64,000 nucleotides of DNA from Octopus bimaculoides. Its lineage: Eukaryota. The notes below the pieces were generated by a model, which saw only the letters and a list, made by a program, of their open reading frames with translations, had not been told where the DNA came from and ran no database searches. Of this stretch, positions 27,694-28,812 are shown in pieces; positions within the stretch are counted from its first letter, which is position 1; every line of letters begins with the position of its first letter. The translations under genes and the position numbers were made by a program. The DNA is taken from positions 4,011,449-4,075,448 of the forward strand of contig NC_068983.1 of assembly GCF_001194135.2 (NCBI RefSeq). The letters are read 5' to 3'.

Positions 27694-28812
27694 CTGGACT
27701 TTGTGTACGGATCCACGATTTTCCTTCCTTAGCAACTCGGGGAAAATACCGAGAAAAGGCCATCCTTTAGGCCCCGGAAGTTGTTTTAAGGGGTACGGAG
27801 CTGTAGAGGAATTTTTACCCGTTGTCGGTGGAGATCGTGCTTTTAGAGGAGTAGTAGCTGTAGTAGTAGTAGTAGTAGAACCGTTGGTGATCAGTGATCG
27901 AACTGAACGATTGATGAGCGTTGATGTTAACCAGGCTGGTCTCCGTAACGTTGCTGTGATCATCACAGGACAACAGGATCGTCTGGTTGCTAGATCGAAT
28001 CCGGAGCAGTGCTCTGATATCGTTAGAGCTCGCCCTACCCATGGCTTTGACACTGGTGTTGTTGTTGTTGTTGTTGATGATGGTGATGATGAGGAGGGGG
28101 ATATTAATGATGCTGTGGACAAGTGAGATGATGATGGTGGTGATGGCGATGCTGATTGTGGTGTTGCTGTTGTTGTTGATGAAGAATATAATAATGATGA
28201 TGGTGATGACGGAGGAAATGATTGTGAAGATGATGGTGATGATGATGAAGATGATATTGAAGATGAAGATGATGACGACGACGACGACGATGATGATGGT
28301 GATGAAGAGAGCAAAAGTGCAGGTGATGAAGAGGATAAGTTTGACGTCGTCAACGGCAACGAAGACGACGGTGATAATGTTGATGATGATGATGATGATG
28401 ATGTCCTACGGACAGTCGTCGTTGATGTTGCTGTTGTTAAGGAAGCGATGCGACTATCATTATTACTACTGCTATATCTGATGCCTTTACAAACATGATT
28501 AATATTATTATTACTATTATAATTATTATAATTATTATTATTATTATTGTTATTATTATTATTGTTATTATAATTGTTACTACTACAACGTGAGGTTACA
28601 GCTCGGATATTACTATAAATATTGTTATTACTACAACAACCGCGAGAAGTAGTAGTTTTAGAAATACTACGTGAAGTAGTGGTCGTAGTAGAAGTGTTGT
28701 TGGCGGCACCCGTACAGGCACCCGTTGTGTGTTTAGGTAAGTGTAGCAATCGATAGAGGCCCCTGGGAACGTGGCCAGACACCACCCTCCGTAAAAGGGT
28801 TGACTCGGCCAT
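27694..28812 (-). CDS. N-terminal coding exon of a mitochondrial-clan cytochrome P450 (CYP24/CYP27/CYP12-like) with a long low-complexity extension
   Basis: Open frame from ATG 28812 (MAESTLLRRVV...) to ...PYPLKQLPGPKGWPFLGIFPELLRKENRGSVHKVQ, then CAG|GTAAGT donor (GT at 27693-27692), 373 codons. LPGP at 27780-27769 is the P450 proline-rich hinge. A phase-0 intron after 'HKVQ' matches the first intron position recalled for CYP27A1 (LHQLQ|V) and CYP24A1. There is no N-terminal TM anchor, and the leaders are Arg/Ser/Thr-rich. An alternative start at ATG 27963 gives a normal 90-aa exon. Confidence 0.8.

What the first reader, a model, noticed from the sequence alone, without database searches (positions are those of the whole stretch)
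27694..28812. Mitochondrial-type P450 with a ~280-aa microsatellite-built N-terminal extension and two presequence-like segments
Seen: one uninterrupted frame runs 373 codons from ATG 28812 to the P450 exon donor. It crosses about 850 nt of poly-Asn, poly-Ser and poly-Thr built only from triplet repeats. The (AAT)n tract is read as Asn rather than TAA, and there are no dinucleotide repeats, although these saturate the flanks. Both ATG 28812 (MAESTLLRRVVSGHVPRGLYRLLHLPK) and ATG 27963 (MITATLRRPAWLTSTLINRSVRSL) start Arg-rich, acid-poor segments. Established: mitochondrial CYPs normally reach the PGP hinge at about residue 50-60; the second ATG gives that length, the first puts it near residue 345. 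Inference: either a very long disordered or bipartite targeting leader grown by in-frame repeat expansion, or alternative starts giving two isoforms.
Basis: partly seen in the sequence, partly recalled or inferred. Interest (0 to 1): 0.75.

Follow-up and report, generated by a model that had tools for sequence, protein, structure and literature searches.

The report
Mitochondrial P450 exon with repeat-built leader
This is the first coding exon of a mitochondrial-type cytochrome P450 gene. An extra 283 codons built largely from triplet repeats stay in frame upstream of the normal start, so the enzyme may carry an unusually long disordered leader, but RNA or protein data are needed to show that the leader is made.

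Summary
On the minus strand one frame is open from ATG 28812 to a consensus donor (CAG|GTAAGT, exon end 27694), 373 codons in all.

The last 38 codons are homologous to the first exon of molluscan mitochondrial-clan P450s. One of these is a curated Biomphalaria glabrata gene whose full protein is a clear P450, closest to CYP24A1. No other P450 exon lies in the window.

ATG 27963 matches the start used by relatives. It puts the PGP hinge at residue 63, against 36-102 in 17 relatives. ATG 28812 puts it at residue 346.

The 283-codon extension is 55% Ser, Thr and Asn, and its open frame is unlikely to be chance:
- It has 0 stops, against 7 and 38 in the other two sense frames.
- None of 5000 dinucleotide shuffles was stop-free, and the most conservative null gives P about 0.006-0.02.
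- The (TCA)n-derived tract has 38 independent one-step variants, none of them TAA or TGA.
- It holds no di- or tetranucleotide repeats.
- ATG 28812 ends the longest ATG-free stretch in the window.

My best reading (about 0.55) is that the extension is translated in at least some transcripts. No transcript or cephalopod orthologue could be reached, so an untranslated leader remains a serious rival.

The parts
27694..28812 (-). Open frame of the exon, from ATG 28812 to the splice donor (373 codons)
   Evidence: Translation has no stop. This is the longest N-free ORF in the window by a factor of 2.4.
28810..28812 (-). Upstream start candidate ATG1, context caacatATGg (A at -3, G at +4)
   Evidence: It is the first ATG in any frame after 1,125 ATG-free nucleotides, the longest such gap on this strand.
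27964..28812 (-). 283-codon extension: 87 Ser, 37 Thr, 31 Asn, 19 Pro, 15 Arg and only 4 acidic residues, net charge +15
   Evidence: It has 0 stops against a shuffle mean of 10 (0 of 5000 shuffles stop-free). The random-phase null gives P = 0.006-0.02.
28453..28632 (-). Asn-rich tract derived from (AAT)n, read as AAT and not as TAA
   Evidence: 24 of 60 codons are AAT. Variants are AGT, TAT, AAC and ATT. TRF calls an array at 28498-28579.
28060..28452 (-). Ser/Thr/Pro-rich tract derived from (TCA)n and (ACA)n, with C held at codon position 2 throughout
   Evidence: Counts are for 28407-28060 (116 codons): 43 are TCA. There are 38 independent runs of one-step variants, none TAA or TGA (P = 7e-5 if all variants are equally likely).
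27961..27963 (-). Second in-frame ATG (ATG2, codon 284), context cctgtgATGa. It corresponds to the start used by relatives.
   Evidence: It aligns in column 1 with the M of five relatives. The segment after it resembles relatives' N-termini (z 2.3 and 1.8), whereas the ATG1 segment does not (z below 0).
27694..27963 (-). Canonical first-exon coding part (90 codons): presequence-like segment, Thr-rich linker and conserved block STAPYPLKQLPGPKGWPFLGIFPELLRKENRGSVHKVQ (27807-27694)
   Evidence: phmmer hits to molluscan first exons, best 45 bits, E = 1.2e-6 in 1.84 billion proteins. A profile built without the window sequence hits only this ORF, E = 3.7e-16. tblastn with the Biomphalaria mito-clan CYP gives E = 1.4e-10.
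27769..27777 (-). Pro-Gly-Pro hinge (CCG GGG CCT)
   Evidence: G12, P13 and G15 are invariant in alignment A1. The profile aligns it to the LPGPTNWPLLG hinge of CYP24A1.
27688..27693 (-). Splice donor GTAAGT after CAG, phase 0. The intron position is conserved in relatives.
   Evidence: It scores 12.6 bits, the best donor in the region. L001 has GTGCAG|GTAAGT at the same codon. Relatives' ORFs read through as ..VQ|VS or ..LM|VS.
28882..28895 (-). Acceptor-like site tcttctctccacag|A. An exon starting here would begin at 28881, in phase 0 of the ORF.
   Evidence: It scores 12.2 bits with a rough PWM. It is one of only 3 sites at or above 12 bits on the whole minus strand.
28849..28854 (-). Donor-like site CAG|GTGAGA, 43 nt upstream of ATG1, phase 0
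   Evidence: It scores 11.4 bits. It is one of 6 sites at or above 11 bits on the whole minus strand. No acceptor at or above 8 bits lies between it and 27900.
28943..28948 (-). TATA-like TATATA, about 130 nt upstream of ATG1
   Evidence: Read directly from the sequence. No functional test was made.
27815..28042 (-). Out-of-frame ATG (aaagccATGg) opening a 75-codon ORF that overlaps ATG2
   Evidence: In a transcript that includes it, it would be met before ATG2.
28813..29937 (-). 1,125-nt stretch with no ATG in any frame, ending at ATG1. It is CT-, CA- and triplet-repeat rich with 10% G.
   Evidence: 0 ATG against a shuffle mean of 7.5 (0 of 2000 shuffles). It is the longest ATG-free, N-free gap on this strand.

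Best explanation
The region is the first coding exon of a mitochondrial-clan cytochrome P450 gene on the minus strand. The remaining exons lie beyond the window, because intron 1 is longer than 27.7 kb.

The ancestral start and matrix-targeting presequence correspond to ATG 27963. In this lineage an upstream ATG (28812) has come into frame with it through 283 codons. These are partly unique sequence and partly degenerate (AAT)n, (ACT)n, (TCA)n and (ACA)n tracts. The frame is kept free of stops and of non-3n repeats.

I infer that ATG 28812 is translated in at least part of the transcripts. The precursor would then carry a new amphipathic, Arg-rich N-terminus, followed by a disordered, acid-poor Ser/Thr/Asn-rich linker of net charge +15, the old presequence, the PGP hinge and the P450 fold.

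- **Shown:** the homology, the exon boundary, the open frame and the statistics on it.
- **Inferred:** that the long form is translated; that the first segment starts import through the TOM and TIM23 translocases; that the unfolded linker threads through; and that processing at or near the old presequence gives a mature enzyme of normal length.

A shorter form started at ATG 27963 from an internal transcription start may coexist with the long form.
For: **P450 identity**
- The conserved block hits only first-exon fragments of relatives, among them 'Biomphalaria glabrata 1,25-dihydroxyvitamin D(3) 24-hydroxylase mitochondrial, partial'.
- That fragment is the exact N-terminus of a curated B. 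glabrata CYP of clan 'mito' (PMC5440852, Suppl. Data 16).
- The full snail protein matches Pfam p450 at E = 1e-84. Its closest solved structure is mitochondrial CYP24A1 (2.9e-68), followed by CYP11A1.
- The exon profile alone finds CYP24A1 first in the PDB, E = 6.5e-5.
- The exon ends at the same codon with the same donor as in relatives.

**Extension kept open**
- 0 stops against 7 and 38 in the other sense frames.
- 0 of 5000 global or local dinucleotide shuffles are stop-free (mean 10-12 stops). The random-phase null gives 0.006-0.02.
- The ORF frame has the most one-step routes to a stop (166 against 73 and 65) and yet has none.
- 38 independent one-step variants of TCA include no TAA or TGA, P = 7e-5.
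- C stays at codon position 2 from 28700 to 27822.
- There are no di- or tetranucleotide repeats, against 3.2 per kb in the window.

**ATG1 as a start**
- Good context, first ATG after the longest ATG-free gap in the window, and a strong acceptor-like site 69 nt upstream.
- Three out-of-frame ATGs (28496, 28460, 28042) lie between it and ATG2. A ribosome scanning from upstream would therefore rarely reach ATG2.
- Its N-terminus scores like relatives' presequences.
Against: - No transcript, ribosome-profiling or peptide evidence exists here, and no cephalopod orthologue was reachable.
- The window is full of low-complexity ORFs: about 60 of 110-196 codons. Shuffle nulls are therefore too generous, and the conservative null is only about 1-2%.
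- The Met and the presequence at 27963 are intact and align with relatives' starts, as expected if that start is still used.
- Relatives have no extension. Biomphalaria has an in-frame stop 3 codons upstream of its ATG.
- A strong donor-like site at 28855 could remove ATG1 from some transcripts.
- Pfam does not call p450 on the exon alone, and no heme-binding exon is in the window.
Confidence: 0.55

Rival explanations
1. The protein starts at ATG 27963, as in relatives. The 849 nt upstream are untranslated: promoter, 5' leader or 5'-UTR intron. Their open frame is a by-product of a G-poor, triplet-repeat composition in which stops are rare.
For: - ATG 27963 gives a normal hinge position (63, against 36-102 in relatives).
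- Its segment, not the ATG1 segment, resembles relatives' N-termini.
- Relatives lack any extension.
- The window holds many 110-196-codon low-complexity ORFs, some open in two frames at once, for example 15321-14792.
- A second sense frame of the same region has only 7 stops.
- A strong donor-like site at 28855 could start a 5'-UTR intron.
Against: - The frame that is open is the one most exposed to stops. TCA needs one step to become TAA or TGA, and none of 38 variant runs is either.
- There is no acceptor at or above 8 bits between 28855 and 27900, and none at or above 3 bits in the 78 nt (28041-27964) before ATG2.
- The gccATGg at 28042 opens a 75-codon overlapping ORF. ATG2 is therefore the first AUG only if transcripts begin within those 78 nt.
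- There are no di- or tetranucleotide repeats where 3.5 are expected.
Confidence: 0.33
2. The exon is not the first coding exon, or not part of a working gene. In one version, an upstream coding exon splices into the acceptor at 28881, so that the true start lies further upstream and even ATG 28812 is internal. In the other, this is an orphan or decaying copy of exon 1 whose downstream exons are missing.
For: - The frame stays open 64 codons upstream of ATG1, to 29007.
- The acceptor-like site at 28881 is in phase 0 of that frame.
- No further P450 exon was found in 27.7 kb downstream.
- The assembly has ten N gaps, one of them 770 nt into the intron.
Against: - No ATG in any frame occurs for 1,125 nt upstream, and no exon-like ORF was seen there.
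- The only strong upstream donor, at 36316, lies in what reads like a transposon fragment.
- The Biomphalaria gene spans 38.6 kb and also has no exon 2 within 10 kb. A long first intron is therefore normal for this family.
- The conserved block and the donor are intact.
Confidence: 0.1

Closest known systems
Biomphalaria glabrata mitochondrial-clan CYP on LGUN_random_Scaffold955:26906-65517 (Adema et al. 2017, PMC5440852, Suppl. Data 16). Its first exon is the GenBank entry '1,25-dihydroxyvitamin D(3) 24-hydroxylase mitochondrial, partial'.
   Same: First-exon homology: 39% identity over 71 aligned positions, and 51% over the 38-residue conserved block. Both share the motif LPGPKGWP.LG.FP....KEN.G..H, an exon end at the same codon, an Arg-rich presequence-like N-terminus and a long first intron.
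   Different: The snail gene has an in-frame stop 3 codons upstream of its ATG and its hinge at residue 51. The window has 283 further in-frame codons upstream.
Vertebrate mitochondrial P450s CYP24A1, CYP11A1 and CYP27, and the lophotrochozoan mitochondrial-clan families CYP10, CYP44, CYP362, CYP371, CYP372 and CYP376 (PMC4229089)
   Same: The profile of this exon family finds CYP24A1 first among solved structures. The snail relative's full protein is closest to CYP24A1 and then CYP11A1. The leader is amphipathic and basic, not a hydrophobic ER anchor.
   Different: From my own knowledge, known members have cleavable presequences of a few tens of residues. A leader of about 345 residues before the hinge has not, as far as I know, been described. 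No CYP family name can be given from one exon.
Bipartite or tandem mitochondrial targeting signals and internal presequence-like segments (own knowledge: cytochrome b2 and c1 bipartite signals; iMTS-L of Backes et al. 2018)
   Same: Two presequence-like amphipathic, Arg-rich segments lie in one precursor (residues 1-27 and 284-310), which are the two peaks of helical moment in the leader.
   Different: In known bipartite signals the second part is a hydrophobic sorting signal that directly follows the first. Here the two are 256 residues apart, the second is the ancestral presequence, and no import data exist.
Alternative translation or transcription starts that give long and short isoforms of organellar proteins (own knowledge)
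   Same: There are two in-frame ATGs, each followed by a targeting-like segment.
   Different: Usually one isoform lacks the targeting signal. Here both would carry one. Three out-of-frame ATGs between the two starts argue against leaky scanning, so a second promoter would be needed.
In-frame trinucleotide-repeat expansions that make homopolymer-rich disordered inserts in proteins (own knowledge: the Asn-rich inserts of Plasmodium and Dictyostelium proteins)
   Same: Asn, Ser and Thr runs are encoded by degenerate (AAT)n, (TCA)n, (ACA)n and (ACT)n. Only 3n repeats occur, and third-position variants are common (21 of 50 one-step variants of TCA).
   Different: Here the tract lies upstream of the ancestral start codon and not inside a conserved protein, so whether it is coding at all is the open question.

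Membership tests
Cytochrome P450 (Pfam PF00067) | Proline-rich hinge (L/P)PGPxxxPxxG at the start of the fold | tested here: met
   LPGPKGWPFLG at residues 345-355. L10, G12, P13, G15, P17 and G20 are invariant in A1. It aligns to LPGPTNWPLLG of CYP24A1, and also to CYP1A1 and CYP2R1.
Cytochrome P450 (Pfam PF00067) | Homology to a protein that is demonstrably a P450 over its full length | tested here: met
   The exon is homologous to P0001 (45 bits, E = 1.2e-6 in 1.84 billion proteins; tblastn E = 1.4e-10). P0001 is the N-terminus of a snail CYP that matches Pfam p450 at E = 1e-84.
Cytochrome P450 (Pfam PF00067) | Heme-binding loop FxxGxRxCxG, ExxR and the I-helix AGxxT | tested here: inconclusive
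   None was found on the minus strand at 1-27693 by motif, tblastn or Pfam. The exons that would carry them lie outside the window, so their presence in this gene is unknown.
Cytochrome P450 (Pfam PF00067) | Pfam model match on the sequence itself | tested here: inconclusive
   No p450 hit on the 372-, 90- or 36-residue fragments, even at E up to 10. The fragment covers only about 30 of 462 model positions, so this is a limit of sensitivity.
Mitochondrial clan of P450s | Closest to mitochondrial rather than microsomal P450s | tested here: met
   The exon profile ranks CYP24A1 at 6.5e-5 and CYP1A1 next at 0.033. The snail relative ranks CYP24A1 at 2.9e-68 and CYP11A1 at 1e-48, with microsomal CYP3A4 at 1e-30. 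The paper assigns it to clan 'mito'.
Mitochondrial clan of P450s | Amphipathic, basic, acid-poor N-terminal presequence instead of a hydrophobic signal anchor | tested here: met
   A crude score only. Both N-termini have 4 Arg, at most 1 acidic residue, and mu11 of 0.72-0.78, similar to relatives (0.46-0.83). TargetP and MitoFates were not available.
Mitochondrial clan of P450s | Import into mitochondria, cleavage by the processing peptidase, and electron supply from adrenodoxin | not testable with these tools
   Needs experiments. The residues that bind adrenodoxin lie in exons outside the window.
Translated N-terminal extension (coding sequence) | Frame open and free of frame-breaking repeats, beyond chance | tested here: met
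   0 stops; 0 of 5000 shuffles stop-free; random-phase P = 0.006-0.02; no TAA or TGA among 38 TCA variants; no di- or tetranucleotide repeats.
Translated N-terminal extension (coding sequence) | Mature transcripts contain ATG 28812, and ribosomes start there | not testable with these tools
   No transcript or ribosome data are reachable. The indirect signs are context, the ATG-free leader and the acceptor-like site at 28881.
Translated N-terminal extension (coding sequence) | Frame conserved in orthologues (only 3n indels, no stops) | not testable with these tools
   No relative closer than 58% identity over the conserved block was found in any collection, and nothing matched the extension.

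The most novel reading that the evidence does not exclude
A mitochondrial P450 has gained a 283-residue translated leader upstream of its intact ancestral presequence. It arose by capture of an upstream ATG and in-frame microsatellite growth. The leader carries a second presequence-like N-terminus that arose de novo. This would be a natural case of a targeting signal being born in front of an old one, with a disordered Ser/Thr/Asn-rich spacer reminiscent of a plastid transit peptide. The import machinery would have to thread and remove that spacer.
Probability: 0.4. Interest if true: 0.6.

Novelty: new variant of a known kind. Interest (0 to 1): 0.4.

Why it matters
If the long form is made, it would be an unusually long leader for a mitochondrial P450. 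It would also be a clean natural experiment on three points:
- how much disordered, repeat-derived sequence the mitochondrial import and processing system tolerates;
- how new targeting signals arise from non-coding sequence;
- how microsatellite-rich genomes feed triplet repeats into coding sequence.

It also matters for annotation. The choice between the two ATGs changes the predicted protein by 283 residues, and automated pipelines that take the longest ORF would differ from those guided by homology.

If the extension is untranslated, the finding is an ordinary first exon behind a repeat-rich leader.

Tried and rejected
**Searches for close relatives**
1. A protein search with the 121-residue conserved end found no hits in the word-indexed database. 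The exhaustive search then found only six distant first-exon fragments.
2. An exact look-up of the window ORF read through to its stop found nothing on record.
3. A protein search with the 101 residues around ATG1 found no homologues.
4. A degenerate DNA scan of metagenome contigs for GPKGWPFLGIFP found 0 matches. As a result, no cephalopod comparison was possible.

**Searches for further P450 exons**
5. Four methods found no convincing exon in the window: motif regexes; tblastn with a CYP24A1 sequence written from memory, used only as a probe; Pfam on 3,188 residues of concatenated downstream ORF segments (sensitivity is reduced by the concatenation); and tblastn with the snail CYP. Two weak look-alikes were rejected. 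The segment at 18547-18479 (GLLIDSSVDWNNVK) had no Pfam hit. The segment at 24179-24054 lacks the ExxR residues.
6. Pfam on the exon alone gave no p450 hit.

**Structural alternatives**
7. The idea that the ATG1 segment is a duplicate of the ATG2 segment was rejected. DNA and protein local alignments score no better than shuffles.
8. An intron inside the extension that would give a short protein is not supported. No acceptor reaches 8 bits, and none lies in the 78 nt before ATG2.
9. The opposite strand carries no gene. Its Asp-rich and Met-rich ORFs of 123-173 codons are the antisense readings of the same repeats and have no plausible start.

**Literature**
10. Searches for octopus P450 or 24-hydroxylase papers found nothing on this gene.
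Full report
**What is there**

On the minus strand a single frame runs from ATG 28812 to CAG at 27696-27694. It is followed by GTAAGT. That makes 373 codons without a stop. The frame is open further still, from TAG 29007 to TAA 27585, for 473 codons. The next longest N-free ORF anywhere in the window has 196 codons, and it is another frame of the same DNA. 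About 60 low-complexity ORFs of 110-185 codons are scattered through the window.

Over the 849 nt between the two in-frame ATGs the other two sense frames carry 7 and 38 stops. The antisense frames carry 60, 7 and 9.

The window is a draft assembly with ten N gaps. None of them lies inside the exon.

**What the exon belongs to**

The last 38 codons are STAPYPLKQLPGPKGWPFLGIFPELLRKENRGSVHKVQ. They are the only part with relatives.

- An exhaustive phmmer search of 1.84 billion representative proteins gave six hits, the best at 45 bits and E = 1.2e-6. All were short ORFs that stop soon after the same ..H.VQ or ..HELM point and then read into an intron as VS...
- A profile search added 14 more of the same kind. 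Two carry names, from Biomphalaria glabrata ('1,25-dihydroxyvitamin D(3) 24-hydroxylase mitochondrial, partial') and from Lymnaea stagnalis.
- A profile built without the window sequence finds this ORF and nothing else in the six-frame translation of the window, E = 3.7e-16.
- The same profile finds mitochondrial CYP24A1 first among all solved structures (E = 6.5e-5). It aligns the hinge LPGPTNWPLLG, and other P450 N-termini follow.

The decisive link came from the literature. The Biomphalaria fragment is the exact N-terminus of a manually curated CYP in Supplementary Data 16 of the snail genome paper (PMC5440852). That gene lies at Scaffold955:26906-65517 and is assigned to clan 'mito'. Its protein continues through GGIDTT, ETLR, PDRW and FGFGTRSC. 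It matches Pfam p450 at E = 1e-84. It is closest to CYP24A1 (2.9e-68) and then CYP11A1.

The exon is therefore the first coding exon of a mitochondrial-clan P450, and its intron position is conserved.

No other P450 exon is detectable in the 27.7 kb downstream. This is not alarming. The snail gene spans 38.6 kb and also has no second exon within 10 kb.

**Which ATG is the old one**

In 17 relatives that begin with Met, the x-G-P hinge lies at residue 36-102, with a median of 76. ATG 27963 puts it at 63 and ATG 28812 at 346.

The segment after ATG 27963 aligns with relatives' N-termini and scores above shuffles against two of them (z 2.3 and 1.8). The segment after ATG 28812 scores below the shuffle mean against all five. 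The two segments are not duplicates of each other.

Biomphalaria has an in-frame stop three codons upstream of its ATG. A Logan contig of an unidentified species has one 40 codons upstream.

So ATG 27963 is the ancestral start. The 283 codons upstream have no counterpart in any of the distant relatives (molluscs and unidentified species) that could be examined.

**Is the open frame more than chance?**

Simple nulls reject chance strongly.
- Independent bases give an expected 14 stops and P = 5e-7.
- None of 5000 dinucleotide-preserving shuffles, global or within 30-120-nt blocks, is stop-free. Their mean is 10-12 stops.

These nulls are too generous for a repeat-rich, G-poor sequence, as the many 110-196-codon junk ORFs show.

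A deliberately conservative null keeps every existing stop and only randomises the phase of 45-150-nt blocks. It gives P = 0.006-0.02.

Two further observations do not depend on having picked an open frame.
- The open frame is the one most exposed to stops, with 166 one-step routes against 73 and 65. In the (TCA)n-derived tract there are 38 independent runs of one-step variants of TCA (ACA, CCA, GCA, TCT, TCC, TCG, TTA). Not one is TAA or TGA. That gives P = 7e-5 if the nine variants are equally likely.
- The phase of the repeats never slips. C stays at codon position 2 from 28700 to 27822, across separate tracts and into the undisputed coding part. This matters because (TCA)n, (ACA)n and (ACT)n would stay stop-free in any phase.

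In addition, the exon has no di-, tetra- or pentanucleotide tract, where about 3.5 would be expected from the window's density. It has eight times the window's density of triplet tracts.

Taken together, this looks like selection against stops and frameshifts with little constraint on the residues themselves. That is what one expects of a disordered spacer that must be read through.

**Signals around the two starts**

*ATG 28812:*
- It has A at -3 and G at +4.
- It is the first ATG in any frame after 1,125 nt, the longest ATG-free, N-free gap on this strand (0 observed against 7.5 in shuffles).
- With a rough splice-site matrix, only three acceptors reach 12 bits and only six donors reach 11 bits on the whole minus strand. 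One such acceptor (28881) and two such donors (28855 and the exon donor at 27694) sit at this locus, and all three are in phase 0 of the ORF.
- The acceptor suggests that a 5' exon further upstream may splice in 69 nt before ATG 28812.
- The donor at 28855 has no good partner. No acceptor between it and 27900 reaches 8 bits. The best, at 28112, would expose an out-of-frame ATG first.

*ATG 27963:*
- Three out-of-frame ATGs lie between the two starts, at 28496, 28460 and 28042.
- The last is in a strong context (gccATGg) and opens a 75-codon ORF across ATG 27963.
- ATG 27963 can therefore be the first AUG only for transcripts that begin, or splice in, within the 78 nt (28041-27964) between that ATG and ATG 27963.

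*The leader as a protein:*
- Both N-termini look like presequences on a crude score. Each has 4 Arg and at most one acidic residue in 30. They give the two highest helical moments in the leader, in the range seen for relatives.
- The whole extension has only four acidic residues and a net charge of +15.

**Most likely mechanism**

I think it more likely than not (about 0.55) that ATG 28812 is used in at least part of the transcripts. The precursor would then consist of:
- a new presequence-like head (residues 1-27);
- a disordered Ser/Thr/Asn/Pro-rich, basic spacer;
- the old presequence (residues 284-310);
- the hinge and the P450 fold.

An unfolded, acid-poor spacer should pass the TOM and TIM23 translocases. 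Cleavage near the old presequence would restore a normal mature enzyme. Everything in this paragraph after 'is used' is inference from general knowledge of mitochondrial import, and none of it was tested here.

The intact Met and presequence at 27963 fit a young extension. They also fit a second, shorter isoform from an internal start. The data here cannot separate these two.

**Rivals**

- **Untranslated leader (about 0.33).** Its weakness is the missing TAA and TGA variants, the constant phase, the absence of non-3n repeats, and the poor situation of ATG 27963 behind gccATGg.
- **Upstream coding exon or orphan exon copy (about 0.1).** This cannot be excluded, because the rest of the gene is outside the window.

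**Novelty and limits**

- The P450 exon itself is a new member of a known family.
- The in-frame, repeat-built, 283-codon leader in front of an intact presequence would be a new variant, and I know of no described parallel among mitochondrial P450s (own knowledge).
- No collection available here contained a relative closer than 58% identity over the conserved block, and nothing matched the extension.
- The splice-site matrix was written from general metazoan frequencies.
- The presequence score is crude.
- One tblastn probe was a human CYP24A1 sequence recalled from memory. It was used only as bait and later replaced by the published snail sequence.
- Transcript mapping and an alignment of orthologous exons would settle the question.

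Noticed in passing
window 28855-28881 (minus strand): A strong acceptor-like site (tcttctctccacag|A, 12.2 bits) and a strong donor-like site (CAG|GTGAGA, 11.4 bits) lie 27 nt apart. Both are in phase 0 of the ORF, and between them the frame reads TRFRRGVPQ. This could be a 27-nt micro-exon, or alternative 5' ends of the first coding exon.
   Followed up: partly
window 28813-29937 (minus strand): No ATG in any frame for 1,125 nt, the longest such gap on this strand. The stretch is made of CT, CA, GA and triplet microsatellites with only 10% G, and it contains a TATA-like TATATA at 28948-28943.
   Followed up: partly
window 14792-15321 (minus strand): A second degenerate triplet-repeat region (His/Thr/Pro/Gln-rich readings) is open in two frames at once for 168 and 173 codons. 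I used it as a reminder that long ORFs arise here without coding.
   Followed up: partly
window 27960-28495 (plus strand): The antisense readings of the Ser tract give a Met/Leu/Val-rich ORF (173 codons) and an Asp/Gly/Glu-rich ORF (123 codons). Neither has a plausible start, and both are mirror images of the same repeats.
   Followed up: partly
window 13642-13806, 26061-26921, 32198-33153, 34258-34756, 35282-35908, 43919-44424, 44912-44921, 50849-51683, 57190-57811, 61076-62051: Ten runs of N (6,057 bases in all) show that this is a draft assembly. Most gaps are flanked by dinucleotide microsatellites. One gap begins 770 nt into intron 1.
   Followed up: yes
window 22320-22519, 23648-23977, 30991-31200, 31943-32139, 35927-36056, 50090-50193, 53635-53843, 62094-62303: A SINE-like interspersed repeat of about 200 nt occurs in at least nine copies on both strands, 71-89% identical to the copy at 30991-31200. 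Copies often abut microsatellites.
   Followed up: partly
window 52783-53169 (minus strand): A 129-codon ORF with sub-threshold matches to transposase helix-turn-helix domains (HTH_23 at 9e-5, Sleeping Beauty HTH, HTH_Tnp_Tc3_2). It is probably a Tc1/mariner-type transposase remnant.
   Followed up: partly
window 36200-36700 (minus strand): Non-repetitive sequence around the only strong upstream donor-like site (36316) reads like a fragment of a retroelement or endonuclease ORF with stops. It was not identified.
   Followed up: no
window 27177-27247: Perfect (AAT)12.7 directly joined to (AAG)11.7 in intron 1, about 450 nt downstream of the exon's donor. Pure triplet arrays therefore also occur in the non-coding flank.
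   Followed up: no
proteins P0004, P0005 (relatives): In relatives too, the stretch between the presequence and the hinge varies in length (hinge at residue 36-102) and is Thr/Ser/Ala-rich, for example TTTTT in P0004 and TTATATA in P0005. This part of the family seems to tolerate low-complexity growth.
   Followed up: partly
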